Shown: positions 1,918-62,356, counted from the stretch's first letter. The stretch: DNA of 64,000 nucleotides from Macrostomum hystrix (GCA_950097015.1 CATNEN010000005.1:4402001-4466000), one strand, 5' to 3'. Numbers and translations are program-made. The notes: a model not told the origin generated them from the letters alone.

Positions 1918-2242
1918 CACAATGGCGCTGATTTCATTTTGTTAATTTATTTAATCTTTTTTCGTTGCCAATCGATTGAAACATTTTTCCTACGAATCAC
2001 AATAGCCGCCTAGGAGTCGGTGAAATGAAAGCCATTTAAAAAAATTTCCATTGTTGATGCTTTAGTCTGTTGTTGTTTTTTTCTCTATGTTTTTTATCTG
2101 CGTCTTTGATGTCACCTTATTAATGTCGAATTTTTTTTACTTTCTACGTTTTGTGTTTTCTTGCATCACAATTGTTTAAATACGGGCAAAGTGCCACTTC
2201 ATGAAAGATACGGAACTGAAATAACTAATATCAGAACAAGAG

Positions 2243-22515: not shown

Positions 22516-23859
22516 CTAGCAGCCTGAGCCGAAGCTGGTCTTGGAGCCTGCATCGGATCCCCTGCTCAGTGCCGGGTAGGACGGCGGTGGTGGAAGCTTC
22601 GGATCCGTTGAAGCAGCCTCCGAGTCGCCCGCAGCGTTCGTCTTTCTGTCTCCGTCGGCGTCGCCTCCCGTCTCGCCGACGAATTCGGCAGGCTCGCCGA
22701 CATTCACCGGCTGCTGCTGGAAATACTTCAACAGTTCAATCGGCAGTGGAAAGATGATTGTTGAATTCTTCTCAGCTGAGATGCTACTCAGAGTTTGAAG
22801 GTAGCGCAACTGAAGGGCAACGTTGCACTCGGATAATTCGATGGCAGCCGCTTTCAGAGCCTTGCTGGCCTTCTCCTCGCCCTCGGCGGCGATCACCTTG
22901 GCTCGAGCCTCCCTGGCTGCTTCAGCCTCGGCAGCCATGGCTCTCTGCAGCTGAGTTGGCAAGCGAACGTCTTTGATCTCGACGCGCTCCACCTTGACGC
23001 CCCAGGTGTCCGTGGCGGCATCGAGGGTCTCCTGCATCACCAGGGCGGATTCGTCACGGCCAGCGAGAAGCTCGTACAGGCTCACTGTACCCAACACGTT
23101 TCGCAGCGTTGTCTGCGCCAGTAGCTTCGTGGACCGACTACAATCCTCGACGTTTACCACCGACATGACAGGATCGAAGATGCGATAGTACACCACAGCA
23201 TCTACGGCCACCGTCACGGAGTCCTTCGTCAGAACCTCCTGAGTGGGCACGTCGAATGTCATAGTTCTCAGGTCGACTCGTTTGACGCTGTCCATGCAAG
23301 GCATGGTAAACACCAAGCCTGGTCCACTTGCCTCCGTGCTAAGAATTCTTCCGAATCGCAGAATCACAGCTCGTTCGTACTGGGCAATCACTTTTAGGCA
23401 GAATACAAATGACAATGGAAAGGTGACTGCAATCAGGGCTACAATGAGGACCTTCATGATGGCCTCACATATTTGCATGTGCCGCTGAGACTGCATCGAG
23501 CCGCCGAAACCGCTGCGTCCAAGTCGCTCAGGCACCAGAGAAAAACTGCGCTGCACCTTGTGGTGATGATGATGCTGCTGATGCCGCTGTGGCGACGGCC
23601 TCAGATGCCGCTTTGCTGGATCTTCTGCTTTCTGCTTTCCTGGCTTGTGCTGCGGCTGCTTTTTTGACTGATGCTGCCCGGCAGAAGCGGCGGCGGCGGC
23701 GGCTGCTGCTGCAGCGGCTGCTGCTGCCTCCTCCTCTTCGGTATCGTCTGGCTCGTTTTCGTCGTCGGACTCGCTGCCCTCGCTTTCTTCGTTAGGATTG
23801 TGGCCGGCTAGCTTCGAGCGGAAGCGGGTGTCCGAGCTGAAACTGACTCCCTTGGCCAT
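22516..23859 (-). CDS. STOM: Stomatin/MEC-2-like SPFH (Band 7) membrane protein, intronless ORF, 447 aa
   Basis: Hairpin membrane segment IAVTFPLSFVFCLK, then YERAVILRFGR, GPGL, VDLRT, QEVLTKDSVTVAVDAVVYYRI, LAQTTLRN, WGVKVERVEIKDVRLP, MAAEAEAAREARAKVIAAEGE, ALQLRYLQTL and NSTIIFPLP: the canonical stomatin motifs in order. Confidence 0.97.
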   Translation of the reverse strand: MAKGVSFSSDTRFRSKLAGHNPNEESEGSESDDENEPDDTEEEEAAAAAAAAAAAAAASAGQHQSKKQPQHKPGKQKAEDPAKRHLRPSPQRHQQHHHHHKVQRSFSLVPERLGRSGFGGSMQSQRHMQICEAIMKVLIVALIAVTFPLSFVFCLKVIAQYERAVILRFGRILSTEASGPGLVFTMPCMDSVKRVDLRTMTFDVPTQEVLTKDSVTVAVDAVVYYRIFDPVMSVVNVEDCSRSTKLLAQTTLRNVLGTVSLYELLAGRDESALVMQETLDAATDTWGVKVERVEIKDVRLPTQLQRAMAAEAEAAREARAKVIAAEGEEKASKALKAAAIELSECNVALQLRYLQTLSSISAEKNSTIIFPLPIELLKYFQQQPVNVGEPAEFVGETGGDADGDRKTNAAGDSEAASTDPKLPPPPSYPALSRGSDAGSKTSFGSGC

Positions 23860-24805: not shown

Positions 24806-26806
24806 ACATTGATAGACAAAAAAAGACATATTGTAATGACATCTAATGCCAGTAAGCTTGTTCTACTAGAGAACCAAATACTCGTACTTGAGAACTTCTA
24901 TTTTGAATTTATTTATTCGAACTATGTATAAAACTATTTCTATCTAGATGCAGTTGAATAATTTCTGCATGCAGAATATGTAGAACAGAATCTGGTCACG
25001 GTCCACTAAAAAATAATAACTAAAGCCGAGAGGGAATTCCGGAGACCACTTCACCGTCATTCGATGAAATGATTACTTTATATAGATCCTAAGTACCTTG
25101 CCATGCTACAGTGTATAAACATTATAGACTCATTGACTGTGTGCATTAATTTATTTGACGATGGCTAAAAAAGTGTCGCAACTGCTTTTTTCCGGAAAGC
25201 GGGTGTAGAAAGTTTACTTTCCAGGAAACAATGTTGTCCAGCACACCCGATAATATTGATCAGCGAAGAATTTCTATATGCAGGCCTTTCCGAGGGCTTC
25301 GTTGGGCGAAATAAATTATGAATTGATTAATCTTTTCCCCATACCGACCAATCATCAAGCTTTATTGTGGGAATGCGTCCAATAAAATATGTATTTACAT
25401 ATAACTTCAATATTCTCAAAAGCCCGTACAACATTCATGTGTTCTGCAGCTGGCATGTTTGTTTTGTGTTTTGAGTTTGATTTTAAAATGAAATTTGAAA
25501 ATGACTGTCTTCTACTAAATGCTCGTGAAATGCACGCCGGTTTTGCACGTCAGTAGGACTACCAAGCCATTTTGCCGTCCGTTTTGATACCCCCTGAAAA
25601 ACTTTTGGCAGCGCCCGAGTGTTAACGCCTGGGTGTTCACTGATTGGTTGACAGACCAGACGATGGTGTCCTGTGGTTGAGTTGCGCCTAGTATTTTGGC
25701 TTGATCTGTGAAATTAGAGAAATTTGAGTCAGGGTGTCCATAGTGACCTATTTCCACCTGTTGTAGCCCTTTTAAGCTCCAGCAAATCTGTCTAGATAAA
25801 ATTAGGTGACTACCGAAGACGGAGATGATGCAGGCATATTCGGATGACATGCAGATAAATTTTGAAGGCCTGGCAAGGCTGTACTGAGGCGCAGTACTAA
25901 TTAGTGTCTAGGGTTGTATGAAATACACTAGCGCTTTTAGGAAAAATCGGACCTTTGGCCAGAAACATTGAATATCTCGACAGTATGACGAGCTGGCGAC
26001 TTGATTCTGGTTTCAGATGATGCGCAACAAAGAGTTGGCCGGTGTTCTTGAGTTTCGTGTGCTTGCGTTGCTCCGTTCGGGTGCAGCACTTCGTGCACTT
26101 CGTGCACTTTTAAGAAGTGTGACGAACGACTTGCATCACTAACTGTCGGCCTGCGTTTACATGTAACTCTTTCAAATGCTTTCAACATCTTTTTGCTTTT
26201 GGAACACAAAAGAGCATATCTCCATCAAAGTAAGCAGAAATTTGAGTTTATCTTCCATTTTCCCTAATTCTGAAGCATGTTTCAACAGCTTCGGAAAAAC
26301 TGCATCGTTGATTCAAGAATCGTCATAGAACAACATCATCTCATCCCCCTATTTCACGCTACAGTTAACTTCCTCTCACGATTTTGGCTCGTGTTTTTTC
26401 ATCGAGTTTTTTTTACGAACCTACCGATGGAAAGAATTTGAAAGCTTTTAAACAGTTGTAAAGCTCTAGCTATTCTATTCAATACTGGCTCGTAGCCATG
26501 CTGTGTTTCTGACGGAAGGCAAAGTCACGCCACTGAAGTCCTGAAGTTGCTTGTTTTGGAATTTACTAGGTCGGGTGCCTAACTTAGAAGCAAATGGAAG
26601 AAAAAAGTGATGACGTGTGTAAAATAAGGTGCTAATGCGTCTTTGGCCATATGAATGTTTCCTAACCCATGTGTGCGCCCAATGTTCCGGCGCGAAAAGC
26701 TTACCCTTACAAACAATAGTAACTATGATACAATACGATCACTTGAGGTAAGCTGAGGTCAGCGAATTATATCCAATCTCAAAAGTACATAATAGCAAAA
26801 AATCTA

Positions 26807-26837
26807 CGAAGCCACGCTCCGTCGAAGCGTGGCTTCG
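26807..26837. other. Perfect 12-bp stem, 7-nt loop hairpin (cgaagccacgct-ccgtcga-agcgtggcttcg)
   Basis: Arms 26807-26818 and 26826-26837 are exact reverse complements. Confidence 0.9.
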
Positions 26838-26899
26838 GTAAATTAATCTTTAAAATCATATTAAATCTATTCGTCCTTGTCGTCGAATAGTCGTCGATT

Positions 26900-29800
26900 C
26901 GTCCATGGATTTGGAGGAGACGCCACGATGGATTTGGAGGAGACGCCACCATGGATTTGGGGGAGACGCCACCATGGATTTGGGGGAGACGCCACCATGG
27001 ATTTGGGGGAGACGCCACCATGGATTTGGGGGAGACGCCACCATGGATTTGGGGGAGACGCCACCATGGATTTGGGGGAGACGCCACCATGGATTTGGGG
27101 GGGAGACGCCACCATGGATTTGGGGGAGACGCCACCATGGATTTGGAAGAGACGCCACCATGGATTTGGGGGGGAGACGCCACCATGGATTTGGGGGAGA
27201 CGCCACCATGGATTTGGAGGAGACGCCACCATGGATTTGGGGGAGACGCCACCATGGATTTGGGGGAGACGCCACCATGGATTTGGGTGGGAGACGCCGC
27301 CATGGATTTGGGGGAGACGCCACCATGGATTTGGGGGAGACGCCACCATGGATTTGGGGGGGAGACGCCACCATGGATTTGGGGGAGACGCCACCATGGA
27401 TTTAGGGGAGACGCCACCATGGATTTGGGGGAGACGCCACCATGGATTTGGGGGGGAGACGCCACCATGGATTTGGGGGAGACGCCACCATGGATTTGGA
27501 GGAGACGCCACCATGGATTTGGGGGAGACGCCACCATGGATTTGGGGGAGACGCCACCATGGATTTGGGGGGGAGACGCCACCATGGATTTGGGGGAGAC
27601 GCCACCATGGATTTGGGGGAGACGCCACCATGGATTTGGGGGAGACGCCGCCATGGATTTGGGTGGGAGACGCCGCCATGGATTTGGGTGGGAGAAGCCG
27701 CCATGGATTTGGGTGGGAGACGCCACCATGGATTTGGGTGGGAGACGCCGCCATGGATTTGGGTGGGAGACGCCACCATGGATTTGGGTGGGAGACGCCA
27801 CCATGGATTTGGGGGAGACGCCACCATGGATTTGGGGTGGGAGACGCCACCATGGATTTGGGGGAGACGCCACCATGGATTTGGGGGAGACGGCACCATG
27901 GATTTGGGGGAGACGCCGCAATGGATTTGGGTGGGAGACGCCGCCATGGATTTGGGTGGGAGAAGCCGCCATGGATTTGGGTGGGAGACGCCACCATGGA
28001 TTTGGGTGGGAGACGCCACCATGGATTTGGGTGGGAGACGCCACCATGGATTTGGGGGAGACGCCACCATGGATTTGGGGGAGACGCCACCATGAATTTG
28101 GGGGAGACGCCACCATGGATTTGGGGGAGACGCCACCATGGATTTGGGGGAGACGCCACCATGGATTTGGGGGAGACGCCACCATGGATTTGGGGGGGAG
28201 ACGCCACCATGGATTTGGGGGAGACGCCACCATGGATTTGGAGGAGACGCCACCATGGATTTGGGGGAGACGCCACCATGGATTTGGGGGAGACGCCACC
28301 ATGGATTTGGGGGGGAGACGCCACCATGGATTTGGGGGAGACGCCACCATGGATTTGGAGGAGACGCCACCATGGATTTGGGGGAGACGCCACCATGGAT
28401 TTGGGGGAGACGCCACCATGGATTTGGGGGAGACGCCACCATGGATTTGGGGGAGACGCCACCATGGATTTGGGGGAGACGCCACCATGGATTTGGGGGG
28501 GAGACGCCACCATGGATTTGGGGGAGACGCCACCATGGATTTGGAGGAGACGCCACCATGGATTTGGGGGGGAGACGCCACCATGGATTTGGGGGAGACG
28601 CCACCATGGATTTGGAGGAGACGCCACCATGGATTTGGGGGAGACGCCACCATGGATTTGGGGGGGAGACGCCACCATGGATTTGGAGGAGACGCCACCA
28701 TGGATTTGGGGGGGAGACGCCACCATGGATTTGGGGGAGACGCCACCATGGATTTGGAGGAGACGCCACCATGGATTTGGGGGAGACGCCACCATGGATT
28801 TGGGGGGGAGACGCCACCATGGATTTGGGGGAGACGCCACCATGGATTTGGGGGAGACGCCACCATGGATTTGGGGGAGACGCCACCATGGATTTGGGGG
28901 AGACGCCACCATGGATTTGGGGGGGAGACGCCACCATGGATTTGGGGGAGACGCCACCATGGATTTGGGGGAGACGCCACCATGGATTTGGGGGGGAGAC
29001 GCCACCATGGATTTGGGGGAGACGCCACCATGGATTTGGAGGAGACGCCACCATGGATTTGGGGGAGACGCCACCATGGATTTGGGGGAGACGCCACCAT
29101 GGATTTGGGGGGGAGACGCCACCATGGATTTGGGGGAGACGCCACCATGGATTTGGGGGAGACGCCACCATGGATTTGGGGGAGACGCCGCCATGGATTT
29201 GGGTGGGAGACGCCGCCATGGATTTGGGTGGGAGAAGCCGCCATGGATTTGGGTGGGAGACGCCACCATGGATTTGGGTGGGAGACGCCACCATGGATTT
29301 GGGGGAGACGCCACCATGGATTTGGGGGAGACGCCACCATGGATTTGGGGGAGACGCCACCATGGATTTGGGGGGGAGACGCCACCATGGATTTGGGGGA
29401 GACGCCACCATGGATTTGGAGGAGACGCCACCATGGATTTGGGGGAGACGCCACCATGGATTTGGGGGAGACGCCACCATGAATTTGGGGGAGACGCCAC
29501 CATGGATTTGGGGGAGACGCCACCATGGATTTGGGGGAGACGCCACCATGGATTTGGGGGAGACGCCACCATGGATTTGGGGGGGAGACGCCACCATGGA
29601 TTTGGGGGAGACGCCACCATGGATTTGGAGGAGACGCCACCATGGATTTGGGGGAGACGCCGCCATGGATTTGGGTGGGAGAAGCCGCCATGGATTTGGG
29701 TGGGAGACGCCACCATGGATTTGGGTGGGAGACGCCGCCATGGATTTGGGTGGGAGACGCCACCATGGATTTGGGGTGGGAGACGCCACCATGGATTTGG

Positions 29801-30265
29801 GGGAGACGCCACCATGGATTTGGGGTGGGAGACGCCACCATGGATTTGGGTGGGAGAAGCCACCATGGATTTGGGGGAGACGCCACCATGGATTTGGGTG
29901 GGAGAAGCCACCATGGATTTGGGGGAGACGCCACCATGGATTTGGAGGAGACGCCACCATGGATTTGGGGGAGACGCCGCCATGGATTTGGGTGGGAGAC
30001 GCCGCCATGGATTTGGGTGGGAGAAGCCGCCATGGATTTGGGTGGGAGACGCCACCATGGATTTGGGTGGGAGACGCCGCCATGGATTTGGGTGGGAGAC
30101 GCCACCATGGATTTGGGGTGGGAGACGCCACCATGGATTTGGGGGAGACGCCACCATGGATTTGGGGTGGGAGACGCCACCATGGATTTGGGTGGGAGAC
30201 GCCACCATGGATTTGGGGTAGACGCCACAATAGAGTTGGGGGAGACGCCACAATGGATTTGGGTG
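26900..30265. repeat. 23-25-bp G-rich minisatellite (ggatttgggggagacgccaccat), ~140-145 units
   Basis: Tandem units vary mainly in G-run length; most unit junctions read GCCACCATGG. Confidence 0.98.
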
Positions 30266-30917
30266 AGCAACGGTTAGAAGCTTTGCGGCTGGAGGCGACA
30301 CAAAGTTTGAGATTTTAATTAGGCCGGCTGGAGGCTGAGCTGGCGGAGAAGGGGAGAGGGTGGGGGAGAAGGCGGGGTAGAACCGTCGGTCCTGATGAGA
30401 CTTATATGCTTTTAGCTTTTGTTATCCATCAAGTTTTAATCCCAAATCATTCAGAATGAAGTATTCAAATTACAGATGCGGAAGGCGATTTATAATTCCA
30501 TAGAGAAACATAATTTCGCCTTTCCGCACGTCGTTCACTATTTACAAGAATTGATTGAAATCAGCTTTCTTAAATTTTAAGCCGACGCCATTTGACTCGT
30601 CGCTTCTCAGACAAATTTTCCTCTTCTCTCTACAAATAAACTGACGCAGTCAAATTCACGCATGCATCCTCAAATGTGAAATACATTCATACACACAATG
30701 ACACGTGCCTACACCAGTGTGTGAGAGCCAGAATTTGCATACACACGGGCCAAATATTATCATTATTATACGGGTTATAAGCTGCATGCATAAACACACT
30801 CATATAGACATTAATCAACTTCATCGCATCGCATCGCTCATTTGTTATTCCGGAATAAAATCGCTGCTTCAATGGCTTTTTTAAGTCTGTCTTGCTTAAA
30901 AATCCACGGAGTGTTGA

Positions 30918-33757: not shown

Positions 33758-34828
33758 GTCACTTATAGATATGGCCCAATTTACGGCCTTCGGCAATAAA
33801 GGTGCACATTTTCCACGCTGCATGCGTACGACACTGATGGCCTTTATCTGCACTAGACTAGTTCTAATTTAGTCAGACTTGATTCAATTTATAATTATTA
33901 CTTCGCGTTGAAGTCTACTGGATCTCGCAGTGTCTAGCAGGCAAGTTAGTACAACATTATTATCCTTTTAAATCTCACCATGTTCATATAACCTCATTAT
34001 ATCGTGAAACCTTCTGTCCCTTGATTTTTTTTCTCTAATTTCAATTATTCTATTTTATTTTCTTTCCCGTTTGGCACAATCGAATCAATCACTTGTCTAC
34101 ATTTTTAATCATCTTTTTAATGTTTTTGAAAGTCCCTCGAGAGTGAATTTTTTGTAGAGACATTACTCAAGACCTTAATTTCACATTGCAGTTAATTTTC
34201 CTGCCGTCAGTGACTATTCAACATGCAGTGGAATTTACAATCGCTTAAATTAGCAATGAAATTGGCGCCTCTTTCATTTTTCCCCCGATTTTCTAGACTA
34301 ATTCCAATATTAATTTTCTGTAAGTTGCGAGAGATTGCGAGAGAATGATCTGCAACATACTACTTTTTTTATCAAGTAATGCATTCGAAGTGCTAGCGAA
34401 TATTTTATGTATCAGTTAAAAATAGTTCTACCGCTGTTCCTTCAACCTCAATTCTGAAGCCAGAACTACATTTTCTGTGTGAAGTGTTACCAAAACACAG
34501 GCTAAACAACGCACCAAGGGGCAGCGACAGCCAACCCTGCCCCCGCTAACAACGATTGGCCAACCAAACAGTACTACAATGTCTCTCTATACGAAATGAG
34601 CAGGGCAGAAAAGTGCTTAATCGTTCAGATATGAAGTCCTGAAAAGCAGGCAACTACTTGTATTCGTGGACCGACCTAGCTCTGTTAGTTTCTGTCTTCA
34701 GATAAACACACAAAACAGTTGAAAAGATATCGGTAACTTTGGTACCTGGACACAATACTAAATCTGTTCAGTTTTAGATACATAAATGTAGAAATACGCT
34801 AAATTATGTTGATCTCGTAAGAATCGTG

Positions 34829-35272
34829 ATGCAACTTGTCTTCAATCAACATAATCAACAATCGCGACTAAAATTTCGAACTGCACTGCTGTTTGTCGCC
34901 TGCCGGTGGGACTTACCAGCCGTGGTCCGACGCCTGCTACGCAATGGGGTGGATCCCGACTATCGCCTGACTTCGAGTTGGCAGACACCGCTGCACGCGG
35001 CTTGTCTGGGAAATTCTTCGCTAAGTGTTCGCCTGCTAGTAAACGCGCAGGCTTCCCTGGACGAGCTCAATATTCAAGGTGAGTCAGGACTGTGCGTCGC
35101 AGCTCGTCTAGGTCACAGTGAAATCGTCACAATGTTACTGGGTGCTATGACGAACCTAGATTGTGGCCAGAGCTCTGGCTTAACAGCTTTGCAATGCGCA
35201 GTTAAGGCAGGATTCTTCCATGTGGCTTCTGCTCTACTGCGGTCCTGTGCACATAGGACAACAGAGACTCTC
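34829..35272 (+). CDS. ANK-Mab-21/cGAS-like protein, exon 1 (~4 ankyrin repeats; the true 5' end may lie further upstream)
   Basis: Motifs QTPLHAAC, ESGLCVAARLGH, LTALQCAVKAG. Donor ctc|gtgagt at 35272/35273 (phase 0). Proposed join: 34829-35272, 35610-37978, 38046-38398, 38486-39882, 39991-40050. Confidence 0.8.
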
Positions 35273-35609
35273 GTGAGTAATCATAAGTTTCTGCTTCTAG
35301 ACTTGGATCATGCCTGCTATATGAAGCATTATTAGTATCATCGCCTCTCTAGAACGTTTAGTTGTTCAATGATTCTGAGAGACACTTCATTTTCCTTATG
35401 AAAGCCAGGCACTAATGCATTCAGCTTTGCGTTCAAATTTAATTAGCTTTTAAACTTTTACACAGTAGTAATGCTAGAAAAGTCACTTGCGGCGTGGCTG
35501 GCAAGCTAGTCCTGGAAAAATTTCAGGATGGGAGATTCTAGTTTAATACTAATACGGGCGGGAAGCCTGGTATTCCCTCTGTTAAAGACATAATTTAACC
35601 ATTTTTTAG

Positions 35610-37978
35610 GCTAATAGAATGCTGGAATTGTCGTTGACTTTGGCTGTACAAGCGAATCGAGCGGAGATAGCCATCGCGCTGATTGATGCCGGAACGCTGC
35701 CAGACGTGGCAACTTTGATTCGCGCAGTCGTTGATCCGCACCTTGGGCATTTTTTACACCCGCTGTTAGAAGCTCGGCCAGATATTAACAAACAATGTCA
35801 AAAGCTCGGCGGTGCTACAGTTCTGTACGCTGCAATCGAAGTAATAAAGTCTGAAGATTTAAAGTTAGTTGATGCTTTACTAAAGGCTGGAGCATGCCCT
35901 AGCATATCATTGTACAACGGATGCTCACCGTTGTATTTAGCTGCGCGAAAAGGCTTCACAAACATTGTGCGACGCCTTCTGACAGAAGGCGCTGATCCTA
36001 ACTGTCTTCAAAATCAAGGTGCCACTCCGCTTCACGTGGCGGCGGCTGAAGGTCATGTAAATGTGATCGCTGTCCTGTTGAATTATGGTGCGCTGCTGGA
36101 CTTTCAGCAGGAAAGTAGCGGAATGACGGCGATACACTTTGCTGCCCAGCATGGCCAAGAGAAGGCTGTGAAAGTACTTGCCAGAAATTCAGCCAATGTG
36201 GACATTCAGGAGGTTCCAAACGGCGGTTTCACAGGATTAACGATTGCTTCGTACTGTGGCTTCTTGACGACTGCTCAGGCCTTTATTAAGGCTCAAACTG
36301 ACGTCAACCTTGCAACGATGGATGGAAGTACACCGTTGCTTGTTGCAGCTCAAAATAATCATCAAAGCACTGTTCAAGCTCTAGCTGATTCACAGCTTAT
36401 AGATCTGAATTATTCGAGCAACGATGGAATAACAGCTCTCTGTATGGCTGCTGACAAAGGATATACCTCAGTTGGTAAGATTCTGGTGCAGAACGGCGCT
36501 TATAGAGACGCTCTATCAAAGTCTGGCTACTCGGCTCTGCATTTCTCCAGCCAGAATGATCACCTGGCGTTTGTTGATATGTTAATTGCGTCACTGGCTG
36601 ATTTAAATGTCGCTTCCAAAGGTGGAATTACGGCTCTTCATGTGGCATCTAACAAGGGCCACATCCGCGTAGTTAAAGCCCTTCTAACAGCCCAAGCGGA
36701 CACGGATATTTGCAGCAAGCAATCAGGCACACCTGTGTGTGCAGCAGCAGCAAACGGGCACGAATTGGTTGTTGCAGCCCTGTTGCGCGCTAACGCTGAC
36801 GTGGACCAAACAGACGTAAGCAATCTGTCTCCAATTTACCTGGCATCACAAGACGGCAGGGACAGAATCGTTAGGCTGCTACTGAATTCTCAGGCGAACC
36901 CTGACTCTTCAAATAAAAACTTTTGCACAGCCTTGTATGTAGCATCGCAGAACAATCATGTGAGGATAATAGAAGCGCTTTTAAATGCGTCTGCCAACTG
37001 TGATCTGCAAAATATAAACGGATATGCACCATTGAGTGTCGCCGCGAAGAACGGTCTCAACCAAGTAGTCTCAGCTCTGGTAAACTCAGGTGCTTACATT
37101 GAAGTGCAATCTTATAGTGGAGAAACACCATTACACCTGGCTGCCGACTACGGTCACCTGACGGTAATCAAAGAGCTAATAAAGGGTATCGGAAGCATTG
37201 ATTGCGTCAATCGTATGTTTAGATCAGCCTTGTTCATTGCAGCTATGAACAGGCATACTTTGGTAGTGCAAGCGCTTCTAGAGGCCAATGCCGATGTTAA
37301 CTTGCGGGACAGAGCAGGATGCACTTCGCTGCATGCGGCATCGGAGAGTGATGCGACACTCGTTGTTCGAGAGTTGATTCGCGCTTACGCGGATGTTGAC
37401 TCGCAGAGCAGCATCGGCTGCTCTCCGTTGTACAAAGCATGTGTAAATTCCAACTCCGAAATCGTTTCTGAACTGCTTCGGGCTCAAGCTGATGCCAATA
37501 TTTGCTCCTCCGAGGGTGCATCTTGTGTACTTTTAGCTGTTCAGGAAGGAAACTTGGACATTTTGCGACAGCTGATCAAGGCCAAAGCCTGTGTTGACAT
37601 CCAAAAGACAGACGGAGCCACGCCATTGCTATTTGCTGCTCAAACTGGCTTCGAAGCGGCAGTTGAACTGTTAATTATGGCCCAGGCAAACCCGAACACC
37701 GGCTTGCAGAACTGTTTCACACCGCTGCACAGAGCAAGCACTGACGGACGTTTGAGCATGGCAGCTCAGTTACTTGGGGCCTTTGCGGATCCTGAGGGCA
37801 CGACTATCGATGGCAGAAACGCAATTGATATAGCGATAAATGCTAATCACACTCAGATTGTCAGTCTTCTGAGAAAGGCTTCGGCTAACAAAGACTTCTT
37901 TGAAAGCTTTGAGACTGGTCATGCAAGCCTCAATGCTGCAGCAGACGATTTCAGGTCTGAGCAAGATCAGCAATCCAG
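35610..37978 (+). CDS. ANK-Mab-21/cGAS-like protein, exon 2 (~21-23 ankyrin repeats)
   Basis: Acceptor ttttttag|gct (phase 0). ~33-aa repeats such as GATPLHVAAAEGHVNVIAVLLNYGA and GETPLHLAADYGHLTVIKELI. Donor tccag|gtaggt (phase 2). Confidence 0.93.
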
Positions 37979-38045
37979 GTAGGTTGACTCATGCTAGGGA
38001 CATTTATTCTGTATTGAATTTTTTTCGTTTTCGCTCGCTTTATAG

Positions 38046-38398
38046 CGTTTCAGAAATCAACAGCATTGCTTTTCACACTGAAATGCTATCGGCTGGGTTT
38101 CATTCTGCGCAGGCAGCCATTCAATCCGCTACTGCTGATGTGATGGAGACAATAATTTGCAGCGAAGTTAGGAATCGGTATGCAAGGCCAAAGCTGTTCA
38201 TTGTTGGCAGTTCCTCCGACGGCTGGGGAAATTGTCTGTCTTCAATTTCTGGAACAATCGACCAGGACTCGGACATTGATGTGACGGAATTTCTAACGGG
38301 TCGGGTATTACATACGAGGAGTCATTGTCGTTGTGACACGGTTGAAGAGGACGAGAAACTTCTCTACTCGGATGGCCACATATTTCTACCTGGCGGTC
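38046..38398 (+). CDS. ANK-Mab-21/cGAS-like protein, exon 3 (N-terminal half of the nucleotidyltransferase core)
   Basis: Acceptor tttatag|c restores AGC across a 67-nt intron. Encodes LFIVGSSSDGW...IDQDSDIDV, the hG[S]-x(n)-D-h-D motif of Pol-beta-superfamily NTases. Donor ggtc|gtaagt (phase 1). Confidence 0.85.
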
Positions 38399-38485
38399 GT
38401 AAGTAGTCGATGTTTTCTAAAAGTTATTTAGTTCAATCGTTGTAATTTAATTGAAAGGGCAAGAATACATTATCATCTTTTCCAG

Positions 38486-39882
38486 CCGAGCATCCATCAA
38501 AGGCATTCAAATCTTCAGCGATAAGGCCCGCAATCGACAGGGTTACTGCCGTTGCGTGCTGCCGCTATCCATCCATAATGGTGCTGCGTTCTAACCGCGA
38601 AACTAATTTGCCCGAATACACCCTAGAAGCTCTGAAGAAAGTAGTCAATACTACAGAATGTCACGCAGTCTTTGTATCGCTTCCTGGTCAAGTGCCTGGT
38701 AATCATCTGAGACTGAGCACGACTTTCCTAGAAAGGTGTTTGATGCGTATGCTGTCTACTGTACAGGGACAGCTGTTTATAATTCTCAAATACCTGGCCA
38801 AGCAAGTACTTTTCAAGATGGTAAAGGGATTGAAGACGTACATCCTGAAGACAATTTTGTTTAAAATGTTAGACATCACAAGGCCAGCTGAATGGACAGC
38901 CCAAAATCTAGTCCAACTAACAAACCATAGTTTGAGAATTTTAATGAACGAGCTGCGAGATCCTAAAAACGAATCCGCGCCAAGCAGATGCATGGCTCAC
39001 TTTTTTCTCCCTGACACTTACGTCTACCTTAAAGACAATCATTCGCAAAGGAAAGAAATTGCTGATGCTGTGGAGGCAGTGCTCGATAACCTACCTGCTC
39101 ACCTGAGGGCCTTTCAACTGCAGCTTAGACCGGCTAGTGAGTTTCGACTCGATGTCTACTGCACCCTGCCAGTTCTGCCAAGCATTTTCATTGTATCTGA
39201 CTCTGAGGCGATGCAATTCCACGAGATCTACCTGTCTGTAAAGAAGCTGCTGATAATGCTTAGCGAGCCTAACCATCGTTCGAACGATATTTTCGAACTG
39301 GTGAATCGCATTCCGAATTGTGCCTTTACGGCTCGAGAATGCATTCGCGTTATGACCCTGCTAAAATATAATAATATTAGTGAGGCTCAGTCAGCTGCTA
39401 AAGCTGCGTTCATTGATGACAACCATGCGGTGGAAACTGGTATCGAGTGCCGTCAAGCTACAGAATATCTATCGCAGTCGAAAGCCTATGAAATAGTCTG
39501 GAATTATCTCAGCACCAACGATGCAACCTGGCGATTTTGTTTTGAATTCGATGCCAGATTACAGTTTTCATTTTTGCCAGACTTTGCTTTTCGTCACTTT
39601 CCATTGCTATTGAAGGGAACAGGTAATAATTATTTGATGAACTTCGTTTCTCTAGCCAGAAGTTTCATCTGGGACCGTTTTGGCCAGTCTACTGAGCCTC
39701 TCGAGCCTCGACCATTAGTGCTTCCACAGGAAAGCTACTTTGATACACAGGACCTTCTTGTGGCGATGCACTATTGCAACAATTTTTCGGATTTCAATTC
39801 GATTTTTAAATCCCAGTTTGATGAGATCGTGCACGATGAGGTTTTGAAGAGGGAATACTTTGAACTTGTGCATTCAAAATGG
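38486..39882 (+). CDS. ANK-Mab-21/cGAS-like protein, exon 4 (third catalytic Asp, Mab-21 C-lobe, unknown C-terminal domain)
   Basis: Acceptor cttttccag|cc (phase 1, 87-nt intron), in frame with the ORF at 38578. Contains AIDRVTAVACCRYP, HLRLSTTFLERCLM, FIILKYLAK, LKTYILKTILF, W and CMAHFFLP, matching the Mab-21/cGLR pattern D-h-V-P-A..WP / WRLSF..E / LK..K / SY..KT..F / CP.FF.P. Confidence 0.85.
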
Positions 39883-39990
39883 GTAAGTATAGACTGCGAT
39901 AGTGTTTACAAAATCCGATTGTACATCATGTGGCACTATTTGATCTGCGAAAAAATCGTTATGCTGAATACATGTGCTTTTTGCTTTCAG

Positions 39991-40050
39991 ATACCATATC
40001 TAAAAAAATGTGCGTCATCGCAACAAAAGGAAGATTCTATCTGCAAATAG
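39991..40050 (+). CDS. ANK-Mab-21/cGAS-like protein, probable exon 5 (IPYLKKCASSQQKEDSICK*)
   Basis: Strong donor tgg|gtaagt at 39882/39883 and acceptor tttttgctttcag| at 39990 define a 108-nt in-frame intron; the stop is TAG at 40048-40050 whether or not it is spliced. Confidence 0.6.
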   Translation: MPYLKKCASSQQKEDSICK

Positions 40051-43039
40051 CAGCTTTTAATTAAGTCTCTACGACAGCATCCCGTTGTCAAAAAAATTTT
40101 GTACGTAAATTATACCTATAAATTTATATCAACTTTTAAATAGTTTTAGTTGAGTAGTAAGCACGTGCAATTGCTGAGGCAAACGTCCCTTTTGCAATTC
40201 AATCAACTTATTGTGTTTAATTGATTAAAGTGTTTAAAATGATTATTAACGAATATTTAGTTACACAAATATATTCCGAAATTTGAAGTCTATAGATTGC
40301 GCGATTTGCCGCTTACGAAAAAATGCTGATTTATGTAAAACACAGTAGTCTCGTTGATTTAATCAACGTTGAATTAGCGTGAAAATATTAAGCGTTAAAT
40401 TGCGCGCTTCGTGCTTGACAGGACCACGTGCTGAAAATTAATTATGGAAAGAGAGCCAATGATTCGCGTATTTAAATATTCAGAAGGCAAAAAGCAAGAA
40501 TCCGCAGAAAACATTAAATCAAGAATGTATTAGAACAGGAACGAAAATTAAAAAAACAAAAAACGAGCTGTGACGAAATTAGTGAAAAACTGCAGGATGA
40601 AATTGCAAAGGGGAAAAGAGCAAACAACAAATGAAGAATAGTACGAAAACTAGAAGAACAAAAAGAAAAAATAGGAGTTCAGAGTTTCTTTCAAGCTTCG
40701 ATGTGGGCGAGCATTCTTCACGCAAGGACCACTAGGAGTAGACTAGGAGTAGACTAGGCGTAGACTAGAAGTAGAGTAGGAGGAGTAGGAGCAGGAGACT
40801 CCTATAGTGGTCCTTTTGGCTTCTGAAAGAAGGAAGCGATTGATTCACATTATTTGAAAGTGCCAGCTGGACACATCGATAGTAAATGAAATGGACTCGC
40901 ATCGAGCATATTTTCTTTTCGCACTATGGTATAGTAGACGTTGCTGAGTGCTGAGTCAAATTTCAGGGCAACAATGTGTCGGCAAGGTATTTGTGGTACA
41001 ACAACTTTGCTCTTGTGAAATAAGAACAATAATAAAACAATTATATAAAACAAGAAATTTAAAAAGCACAAAAAAAGAAAAATTAGCAAAATCATTACCA
41101 AGGACCACAAGAAGAAGTCCATGAATAGAAGCAAGCAACTAAGTTCGCTAAGTCTAATCTGCTTTTAAAAAGTATAAATATTTTAACAAAAAATTCCCAA
41201 TTGGCATAATATTGCTTAGACGCAGACATAAAAAACTTTTATTTTGCTACAAAAAAATGAAAATAATTTTCTGTTTATATAACTAAAGTTTTTAGCTCAA
41301 TAATTTTTACTAGAAAATAGGACACGAACATATTTAATATTTTTATTTACCTGATGTTTGATGTCATTAATGTAAAAAAACTTAATAAGCTCAAACTCAA
41401 GGATGCGGGTATAATAATGTTTGCAATGGCTTTTGTACTTATTTATTCGGTCTGTTGTTATTTAAATTATACTGATGTGCAAATGTTTTGTGGAGAGTAT
41501 CATGTATAACTTTTTATACTAGCAATCAATCCAGCAGTTTTACATTTTTATGATATGTAAGCTATGTTAGAATTCTCAGGCAGCTCTGGTCTCAGCCACA
41601 GTATTCAATGTTTTAATTATAGTAATTAATTAAGCCTTTTTCTACATTCCTAAAGTACATATAGTAAATAGAAACTAGTATAAGTCTATTATTATAAGCA
41701 GACAAGTTTTTATTTTGTTTCTACTAAATGTACTTGTTGGCCATACTTTTTATAGTTTAATGCCTGACAATAAATAGCTAAATGTTTATTCTAACTTCTT
41801 ACATATTTATTAAGTGAATTTTTCAGAATTTATGAGTTCTAATTTTCTTAAAATACATAAAAAAATTGAATACGGATTATGTATGTATGTGCAGTAACTA
41901 ATTTACAACTTAAAAGTTTTAATTGATCTTGACTTTTTTGGTTTTAGTAAATATCATATTAGTTAGGGCAATATTTTATTGCTGGTCTATTTTTATAACT
42001 TTTGTTATGATTATAAACCTTATGACACTTGTTTAAATTTGGGGCCTATTGAATATATAGTAGACTAGATAAACAATGCTTTTTATAACACTATTATCTT
42101 TTAATATTTTATGCTATTGCTAAAATGCTACTTACTTAGCGAACTATAGCTATGTACTATACACATATAGCTAAATACACTAAATACATTAGTAAATCAT
42201 TGGCTTAATGACACTCATCACTATAATCAAATTCATATTTCATAACTTGATGGCTAACCCATAGGACTTTCATACTATTTGGTAGTTTATGCTGCCAATA
42301 CAGAGAAAATATAAAATTTTATTAGTGTTTAAGTTGTAAAAGCTAGGCTATATGTGGGCTATTACACTCTACTAATGAATGTACTCTAACTCTAGTAATA
42401 CTATTGAATTACTTATAGCTAGTTGGTTTGTCACATGTAAGAAAGGGATTTTTTAAAGGAAAGCCTTATTTAGCAACAAAAAGTGTTAATCTCTTTTAAG
42501 GAATAGAATAACTTAAAAAAGATTTTCATCTACTTATAACTGTAGCTGAATATTTTTTATAGATAAAATATTGTATTAAACTACTGTTTCCCTACCCATT
42601 TTTTGATAGAGATGGGGGGATAGTTGTTAAAAACCAAAATTAAAAAATATATGCTGAGTTGATATACAGTGATTCTAATGGCAATTAGCACAAAGTGTTA
42701 TCTTTATGACTATCCTAAACGATCAATAGGCCTATCATTATCTTTATTACATTAATATGAACTAAAAGTTCTGAGAATTTAAGTTTAATTAGTCACATTT
42801 TTATAACTTTGCTTAAACATTTATTAGTAACATAATAAACCCTAATAATGTCTCATTGTTCGACAAAAACAATGAAGTAGCATTTTAAATAAGAAATAAC
42901 AACATTAACCTAGTTTAATATTTTGTTCATCATTTTGGTTTTTTGACAAATTAATCAGCAATCTATACCATACTACTTGACCTGTAATATAAATTCACAA
43001 ATCTATTACATAACATCAGTGGTGATTGTAAGGAGGTTG

Positions 43040-49830: not shown

Positions 49831-49986
49831 TGTCTGCCAGTCTGTCTCTCCAGTCTGTCTCCCACTGCCTGTCTCTAATTGTCAGTTTGTCTCACTGTCC
49901 CCTTATTGTCTGTCTTTCTATTTATTTTTGTGTCAGTCTCACAGCCAGTCTCCCACATCCGCAACATGGATCCCGACCGTCCGCAG

Positions 49987-50478
49987 GTGATGGGAGACGC
50001 TGAATACCTGGCTGCATTTCGAGCCATCGTGTTGCCAGTGGTGTCCCAGTACGCGCCCAATCTGGTGATTGTGTCCGCCGGCTTTGACGCAGCCAGGGGG
50101 CATCCGTCAAATCTAGGCGGCTACTGCCTATCGCCTGAAGGCTTCGCCCAGCTGACGGCTCAGCTATTGTCCGCCAGTCCCGGCGGTCGAGTTGTTCTCG
50201 CCCTAGAAGGCGGCTACGATTTGGCTACGCTGCCTAGCTGCGTTGAAGCTTGTCTGCGTGTACTTTTAGGCGAACCGGCGCCCCAACTGTCAGACGCCGA
50301 ACGTCTTCGCCGACCAAATGCCGATGCTGTTGAACTGATTCATCACGTGCTACGTGTTCAACGCCCGTACTGGGGCTCTTGTCTCGGCCTCGCTCCAGCT
50401 GCCAACACGGTTGACATGAGTGTTGAAGAGGCCACCCAGCGACTGCACGCTTTGAGCTTTGCCGGGTTTGCTGAGTAG
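49987..50478 (+). CDS. HDAC4: Class IIa histone deacetylase, exon 5 (terminal)
   Basis: Acceptor ccgcag|gtg. Encodes MGDAEYLAAFR...VSAGFDAARGH...LGGY...VVLALEGGYDL...RPNADAV...YW, stop TAG. An upstream in-frame acceptor (tctcacag, ~49945) is also possible. Confidence 0.93.
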   Translation: MMGDAEYLAAFRAIVLPVVSQYAPNLVIVSAGFDAARGHPSNLGGYCLSPEGFAQLTAQLLSASPGGRVVLALEGGYDLATLPSCVEACLRVLLGEPAPQLSDAERLRRPNADAVELIHHVLRVQRPYWGSCLGLAPAANTVDMSVEEATQRLHALSFAGFAE

Positions 50479-61384: not shown

Positions 61385-62356
61385 GTGTTGCCCAACTGGC
61401 AGGAGTTCACTAGCCGCGAGCCTAAAAAGTTTCGCGATCTGTGCTGGCACGGCGTGCCAAGCAAGCTCAGACCGCAGGTCTGGTTTCGCCTACTTGGCAA
61501 CGAGCTGAGAATCACCGAGGAATTATTCGACATTCACGTCACCAGAGCCAGAGATATGGCTGAGAAGCAGCAATTGAAACGAACTGGCAACAACGGTATT
61601 CCTTCGTCGTCTTCTTCGTCATCCGATATCGTAGAGCGGACAGCGGAGATGAATTCTTTGAAGCTAATATCGCTGGATGTCAGCCGAACCCTGCCAGACA
61701 TTAAGCTATTTCAACGCGGTGGGCCTTATCACGATCGACTATTCGACCTGTTGGCAGCCTATGCCAGCTTCTCGCCGGACACTGGCTACGTACAGGGCAT
61801 GTCCTTCATCTGCGCTGTCTTGCTGCTCAACTGCTCGTCTGATTATTGCGCCTTCGTCTCATTTGCCAATCTGTTAAGCAGGCCCTGTCTTAGGGCGCAT
61901 TATCGATTCGACGAGCGCCACATGCGAGCGTACGAGCTCACATTTGAAGCCTTACTAGGTGAAAATCTGCCAAGATTGTTGAAACACTTTCAATTGCACG
62001 ATTTCCATATGCGGCCGATCCTAACTGACTGGGTATTCACTGTGTTCGCCAAGAATCTGCCCTACGATCTGGCCTGCCGAATCTGGGATATGTTTGTCCA
62101 CGATGGTGACGCATTCTTGTACAGAGCAGCTCTAGGTGTGCTCAGACTGCACGAGACGCGCCTATTAAGCATGGACTATAGCCAGATGATGGAACTATTG
62201 AAGAACCCGCTGCCAGATTTGGACACCGAGTCTCTGTTTGACAATGTGAAAGCTATCGCTATGCGATTGGATAGTCGAGATCCAATGGATTTTGCTGCTC
62301 TATTTGAACAGTGCCTACAAGATCTGAACAGTGATAGAGCATCTCTATCTTCTTGA
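61385..62356 (+). CDS. TBC1D14: TBC1D12/TBC1D14-like RabGAP, exon 3 (TBC domain)
   Basis: Acceptor ttcccag|gtg. Encodes VLPNW...RDLCWHGVPSKLRPQVW...GNEL, the R-finger ISLDVSRT, the Q-finger YVQGMSF, DWVFTVF and LACRIWD, ending at TGA. Confidence 0.97.
   Translation: MLPNWQEFTSREPKKFRDLCWHGVPSKLRPQVWFRLLGNELRITEELFDIHVTRARDMAEKQQLKRTGNNGIPSSSSSSSDIVERTAEMNSLKLISLDVSRTLPDIKLFQRGGPYHDRLFDLLAAYASFSPDTGYVQGMSFICAVLLLNCSSDYCAFVSFANLLSRPCLRAHYRFDERHMRAYELTFEALLGENLPRLLKHFQLHDFHMRPILTDWVFTVFAKNLPYDLACRIWDMFVHDGDAFLYRAALGVLRLHETRLLSMDYSQMMELLKNPLPDLDTESLFDNVKAIAMRLDSRDPMDFAALFEQCLQDLNSDRASLSS

What the first reader, a model, noticed from the sequence alone, without database searches (positions are those of the whole stretch)
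34829..40050. Giant ankyrin-repeat / cGAS-like (Mab-21) nucleotidyltransferase fusion: candidate novel innate-immune sensor (ANK-cGLR)
Seen: four ORFs listed separately in the track join through phase-compatible GT-AG introns (337, 67 and 87 nt, plus an optional 108 nt) into one ~1540-1576 aa protein. It has ~25-27 ankyrin repeats, then an NTase core (VGSSSDG...DSDID...IDRV), a Mab-21 C-lobe (LRLSTTFLER, LKYLAK, LKTYILKTILF, HFFLP) and ~290 aa of unknown domain. Known: cGAS-like receptors (cGLRs) are Mab-21-fold pattern-recognition enzymes that make cyclic dinucleotides. ANK-fused cGLRs occur in some invertebrates. As I recall, early surveys reported cGAS/STING as lost in flatworms and nematodes (to be verified). 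It is not a canonical ~360-aa developmental MAB21L. Inference: a sensor-enzyme in which a long ANK solenoid recognises a ligand or autoinhibits, and the NTase makes a nucleotide second messenger. If the host is a flatworm lacking STING, this implies an undescribed downstream receptor or a self-contained signalling module.
Basis: partly seen in the sequence, partly recalled or inferred. Interest (0 to 1): 0.9.

Follow-up and report, generated by a model that had tools for sequence, protein, structure and literature searches.

The report
Flatworm ankyrin–cGAS-like receptor gene
Four apparently separate reading frames are one expressed flatworm gene that joins about 26 ankyrin repeats to a cGAS-like enzyme; it belongs to a family already catalogued in Macrostomum, and its trigger, product and receptor are unknown.

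Summary
RNA-derived contigs from four public runs show all four GT-AG joints (introns of 337, 67, 87 and 108 nt). The gene has five exons at 34829-40050 (+) and encodes a 1540-aa protein.

The protein has four parts:
- About 26 ankyrin repeats.
- A cGAS/Mab-21-fold nucleotidyltransferase with an intact G-S...D-x-D...D site.
- A conserved His/Cys insertion.
- A roughly 255-aa C-terminal helical domain with no recognisable relative.

An AlphaFold model of a homologue superposes on human cGAS, MAB21L1, MB21D2 and coral and oyster cGLRs at Z about 17.

The "novel" part of the reading does not hold. The host is a close relative of Macrostomum lignano. All named close homologues (35-40% identity) are M. 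lignano proteins, many with the same ankyrin-plus-NTase layout. Two of their clusters contain PAA45980.1 and PAA57558.1, which Li et al. 2023 filed and cloned as cGLRs. That paper also lists ankyrin-cGLR fusions as a domain type.

This scan has found the same family on other DNA of this genome (at least six notes). One follow-up (s1-084972) reached the same conclusion.

Enzyme activity, ligand, product and the presence of STING were not testable here. Verdict: a new member of a known kind, of modest interest.

The parts
34728..34828 (+). 5' UTR (minimum extent); contains two tiny upstream ATGs and in-frame stops
   Evidence: Contig X3 record 13 starts at 34728, and no upstream joint was seen. 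In-frame stops lie upstream of ATG 34829.
34829..35272 (+). Exon 1, aa 1-148 (start codon ATG 34829; ankyrin repeats 1-4)
   Evidence: Joint 35272>35610 was seen in X1, X2 and X4.
35273..35609 (+). Intron 1, 337 nt, GT..AG, phase 0
35610..37978 (+). Exon 2, aa 149-938 (rest of the ankyrin array and linker)
   Evidence: Pfam Ank_2 E 1.5e-155; tiled by overlapping contigs
34883..37907 (+). Ankyrin solenoid, about 26 repeats, aa 19-914 (spans intron 1)
   Evidence: Repeat HMM built from the protein finds 26 units; Pfam
37979..38045 (+). Intron 2, 67 nt, GT..AG, phase 2. It is spliced in X1 and X2 and retained in X4 (and partly in X3). Retention gives a stop at 37980-37982 after aa 938.
38046..38398 (+). 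Exon 3, aa 938-1056: spine helix, N-lobe of the NTase, G992-S993 (38206-38211), D1014 and D1016 (38272-38280)
   Evidence: Residues are conserved in 37-39 of 39 family members and map to strands beta1/beta2 of the homologue model.
38311..38379 (+). Conserved His/Cys insertion (H1027, C1032, C1034, Y1045, G1048, H1049); candidate metal site
   Evidence: Conservation is 28-38 of 39. It lies in a small beta-hairpin region of lower pLDDT in the model. Metal binding is inferred only.
38399..38485 (+). Intron 3, 87 nt, GT..AG, phase 1; splits the active site between exons
   Evidence: Joint seen in all four runs
38486..39882 (+). Exon 4, aa 1056-1521: third catalytic Asp D1073 (38536-38538), C-lobe, C-terminal domain
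38068..39114 (+). cGAS/Mab-21-fold module, aa about 946-1265 (spans intron 3)
   Evidence: It aligns with residues 7-312 of homologue P0010. That model matches human cGAS 161-521 at Z 17.2 over model residues 1-311.
38773..39075 (+). Pfam Mab-21_C (PF20266) match, 23.3 bits (curated cut-off 24.1)
   Evidence: The family profile hits Sp-cGLR1 (8gjy) at E 1e-5 and mouse cGAS at E 4e-5 in the same region.
39121..39882 (+). C-terminal domain (CTD), aa 1268-1521: helical, partly TPR-like, with small beta elements; found only with this family
   Evidence: AlphaFold model of the window's own sequence: pLDDT 84, pTM 0.85. No Pfam hit. No PDB or Atlas relative. AFDB clusters match only Macrostomum-type accessions.
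39883..39990 (+). Intron 4, 108 nt, GT..AG, phase 0; removed in both contigs that cross it
39991..40050 (+). Exon 5 coding part, last 19 aa and stop TAG 40048-40050
40051..40254 (+). 3' UTR (minimum extent)
   Evidence: Contig X1 record 6 runs to 40254

Best explanation
This is an intact, transcribed five-exon gene of a Macrostomum-type free-living flatworm. It encodes a 1540-aa cytosolic protein with three main parts: an N-terminal solenoid of about 26 ankyrin repeats, a cGAS-like receptor (cGLR, Mab-21 fold) nucleotidyltransferase module, and a family-specific helical C-terminal domain. It belongs to a large, fast-diverging macrostomid expansion of ankyrin-cGLR genes that the 2023 cGLR survey had already catalogued.

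Shown: the gene structure and transcript; the domain order; the cGAS fold (on a homologue at 33-44% identity); and conservation of the G-S / D-x-D / D catalytic residues across paralogues.

Inferred: the NTase is catalytically competent and is held inactive until a ligand is bound. Because the NTase module is near-neutral (pI 7.6, against more than 8.5 for nucleic-acid-sensing cGLRs), the ligand is more likely a protein or other non-nucleic-acid molecule captured by the ankyrin groove and/or the C-terminal domain than dsDNA or dsRNA. Binding would reorder the activation loop as in cGAS and cGLR1. The enzyme would then make a nucleotide second messenger for a downstream receptor, either STING if the lineage has one or something else.
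For: Gene model and expression:
- Four GT-AG joints appear in contigs of four runs.
- One contig links the ankyrin end to the NTase.

Family:
- The exhaustive search gave 108 representative clusters, 48 of them at E below 1e-30. The best is E 1e-117 at 35% identity.
- 27 of the 30 sampled carry a Macrostomum lignano name. The other three comprise one clam protein and two unnamed environmental or assembly sequences.
- Many show ankyrin repeats plus Mab-21_C.
- The window protein is colinear over its full length with the 1575-aa M. lignano protein P0007 (aa 37-1488 against 33-1496, E 1e-169).

Published filing:
- The clusters of hits P0038 and P0031 contain PAA45980.1 and PAA57558.1. These are cGLR constructs #90 and #91 of Li et al. 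2023, Table S3.

Fold:
- The homologue model has pLDDT 88 and pTM 0.89.
- All top Foldseek PDB hits are cGAS, cGLR or MAB21L1.
- VIA-align gives Z 16-17 to human cGAS 161-521, MAB21L1, MB21D2, Cv-cGLR1 and Sp-cGLR1.
- The top Swiss-Prot models are Sp-cGLR2, Cv-cGLR2 and Sp-cGLR1.

Active site:
- The arrangement is IVGS(992-993), 20 residues, DIDV(1014, 1016), 54 residues, IDR(1073).
- These residues are conserved in 36-39 of 39 members.
- They sit on beta1, beta2 and the adjacent long strand of the model.

Other:
- pI values.
- Host: a stomatin ORF is 81% identical over its full length to M. lignano.
Against: - No activity, ligand or product is known for any member.
- The five M. lignano constructs in Li et al. 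carry no 'active' designation in Table S3. They were cloned without their ankyrin arrays, however, and were tested with nucleic-acid ligands.
- On the window's own sequence Pfam finds no Mab-21 N-terminal domain (PF03281). Mab-21_C scores 23.3 bits, just under the 24.1 cut-off.
- The residue before G-S is V rather than Q/T, and the residue after the third Asp is R rather than hydrophobic.
- The window's own N-lobe was not modelled, because the active site is split by intron 3 and the tools take no spliced reference.
- Convergence of the three acids in space was judged from topology, not from coordinates.
- An immune role is inferred only from family membership, copy number and fast divergence.
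Confidence: 0.62

Rival explanations
1. It is a non-catalytic Mab-21-type scaffold. The cGAS-like module binds a nucleotide or a partner but makes no messenger, as proposed for MAB21L1/2 or MID49/51. The ankyrin array would then act as an adaptor platform.
For: MAB21L1 matches the model as well as cGAS does (Z 16.9). None of the five M. lignano constructs is marked active in Li et al. Table S3. Two motif-flanking positions deviate from the published pattern.
Against: G992, S993, D1014, D1016 and D1073 are kept in 36-39 of 39 paralogues although overall identity is only 30-40%. That pattern is expected for a working active site. Li et al. state that Mab21L1/2/3 lack a predicted functional site, yet they filed the Macrostomum proteins among those with complete sites.
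Confidence: 0.2
2. It is an active NTase with a different chemistry: linear 2'-5' or 3'-5' oligonucleotides as made by OAS, or nucleotidylation of RNA or protein, rather than a cyclic dinucleotide.
For: The G-S-x3-G-W-G...S-D-I-D motif and the 20-residue spacer resemble the motif of non-canonical poly(A)/uridylyl transferases (my own knowledge). One paralogue gives a faint Pfam hit to MTPAP-like_central (E 0.008).
Against: The C-lobe is Mab-21_C, not PAP-associated or OAS1_C. All the listed best structural matches (the 50 best by Foldseek and the 50 best entries by VIA-align) are cGAS, cGLR, MAB21L1 or MB21D2, and none is a PAP, TUTase or OAS.
Confidence: 0.1
3. The locus works mainly through an ankyrin-only product. 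Retention of the 67-nt intron 2 stops translation after aa 938, giving a decoy or regulator, and the fused form is minor.
For: Contig X4 record 23 reads straight through intron 2, and X3 record 19 starts inside it. Read-through gives ...SEQDQQSR-stop at aa 938.
Against: The spliced joint is present in X1 and X2, and in X2 at the full depth of the downstream exons. Retained forms may simply be pre-mRNA. The fused layout is conserved over its full length in M. lignano. Contig depths are a poor measure of isoform ratios.
Confidence: 0.06
4. It is a decaying or non-functional family member, transcribed but not under selection.
For: Other loci of this family in the same genome were noted as relics or disrupted (s1-278263, s1-337327, s1-300671; unchecked notes). 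The window protein sits on a long branch without a supported M. lignano orthologue.
Against: The 4620-nt coding sequence is uninterrupted, all four introns are canonical and spliced, all catalytic and family-invariant residues are intact, and the gene is expressed in four samples.
Confidence: 0.02

Closest known systems
Macrostomum lignano cGLR-family proteins filed by Li et al. 2023 (Cell; preprint PMC9980059), e.g. PAA45980.1 (#90, 936 aa), PAA57558.1 (#91), and the unstudied full-length paralogue PAA93879.1 (P0007, 1575 aa)
   Same: They share the NTase-plus-CTD module and its motifs (GSxxxGWG...SDxD, H..C.C, Y..GH, RVSTxxLER, QGQxF..K..IKKV, GLKTYxxK, HFFxxD). Many have the same N-terminal ankyrin array. 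The window protein is colinear over its full length with P0007.
   Different: Identity is only 30-40%, from another species, with no supported one-to-one orthologue. No member has a known ligand, product or phenotype.
Ankyrin-fused cGLRs of the coral Stylophora pistillata (Li et al. 2023, Fig. 1C/4C)
   Same: The same fusion logic: ankyrin repeats attached to a cGLR core.
   Different: A different phylum and probably an independent fusion. I could not compare the sequences, so repeat number and order are unknown to me.
Sp-cGLR2 (A0A2B4RNI3) and Cv-cGLR2 (A0A8B8EY61), 'long' invertebrate cGLRs
   Same: They are the best Swiss-Prot structural matches (E 1e-8), and the alignments run past the core into the C-terminal domain (query residues to 595 and 562). 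Sp-cGLR2 makes 2'3'-cGAMP with an unknown, probably non-nucleic-acid ligand and has an acidic ligand surface.
   Different: TM-scores are only 0.33-0.45. A search with the CTD alone gave only weak matches (E about 1) to mussel Mab-21-like proteins. Neither match is reported to carry an ankyrin array. Homology of the C-terminal domains is a lead, not a finding.
Human cGAS (and MB21D2, MAB21L1)
   Same: The same bilobed Pol-beta NTase plus helical C-lobe fold (Z 16.5-17.2 over the whole catalytic domain) and the same G-S / acid-x-acid / acid arrangement.
   Different: Identity is 11-16%. The cGAS zinc thumb is not at the cGAS position; instead there is a conserved His/Cys insertion in the N-lobe. 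The module is near-neutral (pI 7.6) rather than basic. It also has a 900-aa ankyrin array and a 255-aa C-terminal domain.

Membership tests
cGLR (criteria of Li et al. 2023) | Active-site motif h[QT]GS X8-20 [DE]h[DE]h X50-90 h[DE]h | tested here: met
   The window has IVGS(992-993), X20, DIDV(1014, 1016), X54, IDR(1073). All catalytic residues and both spacers fit. Two flanking positions deviate (V for Q/T, R for a hydrophobic residue), as they also do in Li et al.'s own Macrostomum entries (VMGS, ILGS, VFGS). Residues are conserved in 36-39 of 39 members.
cGLR (criteria of Li et al. 2023) | [quoted passage not shown] | tested here: inconclusive
   The C-lobe passes: the family profile hits Sp-cGLR1 at E 1e-5 and cGAS at E 4e-5. 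The N-lobe gives no sequence-level hit to PF03281 or to PDB chains. Whole-module homology is shown only to Macrostomum proteins that the paper itself filed as cGLRs.
cGLR (criteria of Li et al. 2023) | Predicted structural homology to known cGLR/CD-NTase enzymes | tested here: met
   The model of homologue P0010:1-610 has pLDDT 88. It gives Z 17.2 to human cGAS 161-521, Z 16.4 to Cv-cGLR1 and Z 16.2 to Sp-cGLR1, covering both lobes. Caveat: the model is of a homologue 33-44% identical to the window's pieces, not of the window protein.
cGLR | [quoted passage not shown] | not testable with these tools
   This needs biochemistry. The published constructs of the family are not marked active.
cGLR-STING pathway | A STING (or other) receptor for the product in the same genome | not tested
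   No whole-genome search is available. No scan note on this genome mentions STING. M. lignano is absent from Li et al.'s Table S5. Planarians and Schistosoma lack STING.
Pfam Mab-21 (PF03281) / Mab-21_C (PF20266) | Score at or above the curated gathering cut-off | tested here: not met
   The window scores 23.3 bits on PF20266 against a cut-off of 24.1 and gives no PF03281 hit. Paralogues pass PF20266 (26-31 bits: P0001, P0002, P0007, P0008, P0125). This is a near miss for a divergent member and is not evidence against the fold.
Ankyrin-repeat proteins (PF12796/PF00023) | Tandem 33-aa ANK repeats above the cut-off | tested here: met
   Ank_2 scores 506.7 bits (E 1.5e-155) on exon 2 and 115.7 bits on exon 1. 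I count 26 units.

The most novel reading that the evidence does not exclude
Macrostomid flatworms may have rebuilt cGLR signalling around protein recognition. In this reading the ankyrin solenoid and the family-specific C-terminal domain sense a non-nucleic-acid ligand (a pathogen effector or a guarded host protein). The enzyme's product would act on a receptor other than STING, in a phylum where STING, cGAS, TLRs and NF-kB-type factors are reported lost. The paralogues that carry a caspase or RING domain in the same polypeptide would then be self-contained sensor-effector versions.
Probability: 0.12. Interest if true: 0.75.

Novelty: new member of a known kind. Interest (0 to 1): 0.3.

Why it matters
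Flatworms are usually quoted as having lost cGAS-STING, so a large expressed radiation of ankyrin-cGLR genes in macrostomids is a real gap in the picture of invertebrate immunity. Nothing is known about its ligand, product or receptor. Macrostomum is transgenic- and RNAi-tractable, which makes the family testable. This locus gives a clean, RNA-verified full-length gene model (1540 aa). It also defines the boundaries of the core, a conserved His/Cys insertion and a C-terminal domain that earlier constructs did not separate. It does not open a new category: both the family and the fusion type are published.

Tried and rejected
- **Pfam on exon 3 alone.** Nothing was found even at E 10.
- **Folding the window's own NTase.** I therefore modelled a homologue (P0010) and the window's own C-terminal domain separately.
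- **Identifying the C-terminal domain.** None of these searches gave a specific relative:
  - Pfam on 26 members gave only noise.
  - Foldseek against PDB had a best E of 0.47.
  - VIA-align wide had a best Z of 7.3, with generic TPR-like or alpha-solenoid matches.
  - ESM Atlas had TM 0.37 or less by the query, and its best match was a short bacterial TPR protein.
- **Second word-index search with the family profile.** It returned only 13 hits, nearly all Macrostomum, and did not reach mollusc cGLRs. Homology of the C-terminal domain with Cv-cGLR2 and Sp-cGLR2 therefore stays open.
- **Paralogues in the window.** A tblastn search for tandem paralogues found none.
- **Neighbouring ORFs.** I scanned them for immune domains. 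I found stomatin, an HDAC exon, RabGAP-TBC and repeats, with nothing related.
- **Literature on STING in Macrostomum.** Nothing was found.
- **Tree of 39 modules.** The window sits on a long branch with no supported sister, so I make no orthology claim.
- **Readings rejected.**
  - A poly(A)/uridylyl-transferase identity suggested by the GS...SDID motif: neither the fold nor the C-lobe agrees.
  - A developmental MAB21L identity: the size, fusion, copy number and intact triad all differ.

Full report
**Observation**

ORFs at 34826-35335, 35619-37982, 37900-38406 and 38578-40050 on the + strand are real. Reading the DNA and splicing it in a script gives these exons:

| Exon | Coordinates |
|---|---|
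| 1 | 34829-35272 |
| 2 | 35610-37978 |
| 3 | 38046-38398 |
| 4 | 38486-39882 |
| 5 | 39991-40050 |

The introns are 337, 67, 87 and 108 nt. All are GT..AG and all are phase-compatible.

Contigs of four public runs (X1-X4, one study, one coded organism) were laid on 34400-40300.
- All four joints appear, each in one to four runs.
- Contig X2 record 12 runs from 37372 to 39595 across introns 2 and 3. The last ankyrin repeats, the NTase N-lobe and the C-lobe are therefore on one RNA.
- X4 record 20 joins exons 1 and 2, and overlapping contigs tile exon 2.
- The 108-nt intron is removed in both contigs that cross it. The supported product is therefore 1540 aa, not 1576.
- No joint lies upstream of 34728-34805, and in-frame stops precede ATG 34829. 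That ATG is the likely start.
- Intron 2 is read through in X4 record 23 and partly in X3 record 19. This would stop translation after aa 938.

**Anatomy**

- **Ankyrin array.** Pfam finds ankyrin repeats at E 1e-33 (exon 1) and 1e-155 (exon 2). A repeat HMM built from the protein counts 26 units between aa 19 and 914.
- **NTase module.** It shows IVG992S993, 20 residues, D1014-I-D1016-V, 54 residues, I-D1073-R. Pfam sees only Mab-21_C, at 23.3 bits against a cut-off of 24.1, at 38773-39075, and nothing on exon 3.
- **C-terminal domain.** The last roughly 255 aa (39121-39882) have no Pfam match.

**Relatives**

An exhaustive HMMER search with the exon-4 protein found 108 representative clusters, 48 of them at E below 1e-30.
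- The best hit is E 1e-117, and identities are 35-40%.
- 27 of the 30 clusters whose names I looked up are Macrostomum lignano proteins. The other three are one clam protein and two unnamed environmental or assembly sequences.
- Many combine long ankyrin arrays with Mab-21_C.
- The spliced window protein aligns colinearly across the exon 3/4 junction with these proteins.
- It aligns over nearly its whole length with the 1575-aa P0007 (aa 37-1488 against 33-1496, E 1e-169).

A conserved stomatin ORF in the window (22516-23856, minus strand) is 81% identical over 100% of its length to an M. lignano protein. The host is therefore a close relative of M. lignano but not that species.

In a tree of 39 modules the window protein sits on a long branch with no supported M. 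lignano sister. This fits a fast-turning-over family, but I make no orthology claim.

**Fold**

An alignment of 27 homologue modules plus the two window pieces (A1) was used to model P0010:1-610. That homologue is 44% and 33% identical to the window's exon-3 and exon-4 pieces. The model has pLDDT 88 and pTM 0.89.
- The 50 best Foldseek PDB matches are all cGAS, Cv-cGLR1, Sp-cGLR1 or MAB21L1.
- VIA-align gives Z 17.2 to human cGAS residues 161-521 over model residues 1-311. It gives Z 16-17 to MAB21L1, MB21D2, Cv-cGLR1 and Sp-cGLR1.
- The family profile also hits Sp-cGLR1 (E 1e-5) and mouse cGAS (E 4e-5) by sequence in the C-lobe.
- The language-model atlas points to Mab-21_C clusters.

The window's G992/S993, D1014/D1016 and D1073 map to G48/S49, D70/D72 and D132 of the model. 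These sit just after strand beta1, at the start of beta2, and on the adjacent long strand. This is the canonical Pol-beta NTase arrangement. I had no coordinates, so convergence in space is judged from topology only.

Across 39 family modules these residues are kept in 36-39 sequences. A His/Cys set is also kept in 35-38 sequences: H1027, C1034, H1049 and C1081. This is a candidate metal site at a different position from the cGAS zinc thumb, and it is inferred only.

**C-terminal domain**

The window's own sequence folds confidently (pLDDT 84, pTM 0.85) into a mainly helical domain with short strands.
- It has no significant PDB match by Foldseek (best E 0.47).
- VIA-align finds only generic TPR-like or alpha-solenoid similarity (best Z 7.3).
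- The ESM Atlas gives nothing convincing.
- In AFDB clusters, significant matches go only to accessions of the Macrostomum type.

In Swiss-Prot models the two best matches of the whole module are Sp-cGLR2 and Cv-cGLR2, and their alignments extend into this domain. It may therefore be a diverged form of the C-terminal extension of 'long' invertebrate cGLRs. That is a lead I could not settle.

**What is already known**

- Wu et al. 2014 reported cGAS and STING as lost in nematodes and flatworms, on the basis of Schistosoma (PMC4117786). A 2026 study found neither in the planarian Schmidtea (PMC13563047).
- Li et al. [quoted passage not shown] They also list ankyrin- and TPR-fused cGLRs as domain types.
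- Their Table S3 contains five M. lignano proteins cloned as cGLRs (#89-93), and these carry the same family motifs.
- The clusters of my hits P0038 (E 1e-40) and P0031 (E 2e-46) contain PAA45980.1 (#90) and PAA57558.1 (#91). The family and the fusion type are therefore published.
- None of the five constructs carries an active-enzyme designation in that table.
- M. lignano is not in their cGLR/STING count table. I found no paper on STING in Macrostomum.

**Earlier notes of this scan**

At least six other notes on other pieces of this genome describe ankyrin-cGLR loci, some of them broken. One follow-up (s1-084972) reached the same conclusion as I do. I treat these as leads. My conclusion rests on the calls above.

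**Mechanism**

Shown:
- An expressed, intact ankyrin-cGLR-CTD gene.
- A cGAS fold, demonstrated on a homologue.
- Catalytic residues conserved under strong overall divergence.

Inferred:
- The enzyme is a ligand-gated NTase that makes a nucleotide messenger.
- The core is near-neutral (pI 7.6) and the C-terminal domain is acidic (pI 5.2). Nucleic-acid-sensing cGLRs have pI above 8.5. This, together with the 900-aa ankyrin groove, makes a non-nucleic-acid ligand more likely than dsDNA or dsRNA.
- The receptor is unknown.

Rivals:
- A non-catalytic Mab-21 scaffold.
- An NTase with other chemistry.
- An ankyrin-only isoform as the main product.
- A decaying copy.

**Verdict**

This is a new member of a known kind. 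The open questions (ligand, product, receptor) belong to the whole macrostomid family rather than to this locus.

Noticed in passing
window 37979-38045: Intron 2 (67 nt) is retained in contig X4 record 23 and partly in X3 record 19, but is spliced in X1 and X2. Retention puts a TAG at 37980-37982 and would give a 938-aa ankyrin-only product. It may be pre-mRNA or a regulated isoform.
   Followed up: partly
window 38991: Run X3 carries C>T at this position. It is the third base of codon C1224 (TGC>TGT), so the change is synonymous; an allele or strain difference.
   Followed up: yes
M. lignano proteins P0061 (1099 aa) and P0130 (1444 aa): These paralogues combine the cGLR-like module, ankyrin repeats and a C-terminal caspase domain (Peptidase_C14, E 3e-25) in one predicted protein. 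P0060 (2381 aa) adds WSC and RING domains, and P0001 has two cGLR modules in tandem. They may be real sensor-effector fusions or merged gene models.
   Followed up: partly
P0282 (347 aa, 1065-nt contig) and L001 (JGI sample 3300040775, 1692 nt): A family member is deposited as 'MAG: Kangiellaceae bacterium' (41% identity to P0010), and another lies on a short metagenome contig. Both most likely come from flatworm DNA in environmental samples or in a mis-binned bacterial genome.
   Followed up: no
window 22516-23856 (-): A single-exon stomatin/Band_7 ORF (Pfam E 2e-36) is 81% identical over its full length to M. lignano BOX15_Mlig033788g2. This places the host next to, but outside, M. lignano.
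   Followed up: yes
window 26779-30318: This GC-rich stretch (GC 0.52-0.61) is open in all six frames for 2.5-3.5 kb, which indicates a long low-complexity or tandem repeat. The 843-aa ORF has no Pfam domain.
   Followed up: no
window 2161-4020: Long ORFs on both strands lie over a region of strong GC skew. The + strand ORF scores as pentapeptide repeats (E 4e-92), so this is probably a short-period DNA repeat rather than a gene.
   Followed up: no
window 49879-50475 (+) and 61385-62353 (+): Neighbouring gene fragments: the C-terminal part of a histone deacetylase domain (E 4e-21) and a RabGAP-TBC domain (E 2e-47). No immune-type gene and no second cGLR lies in the window.
   Followed up: partly
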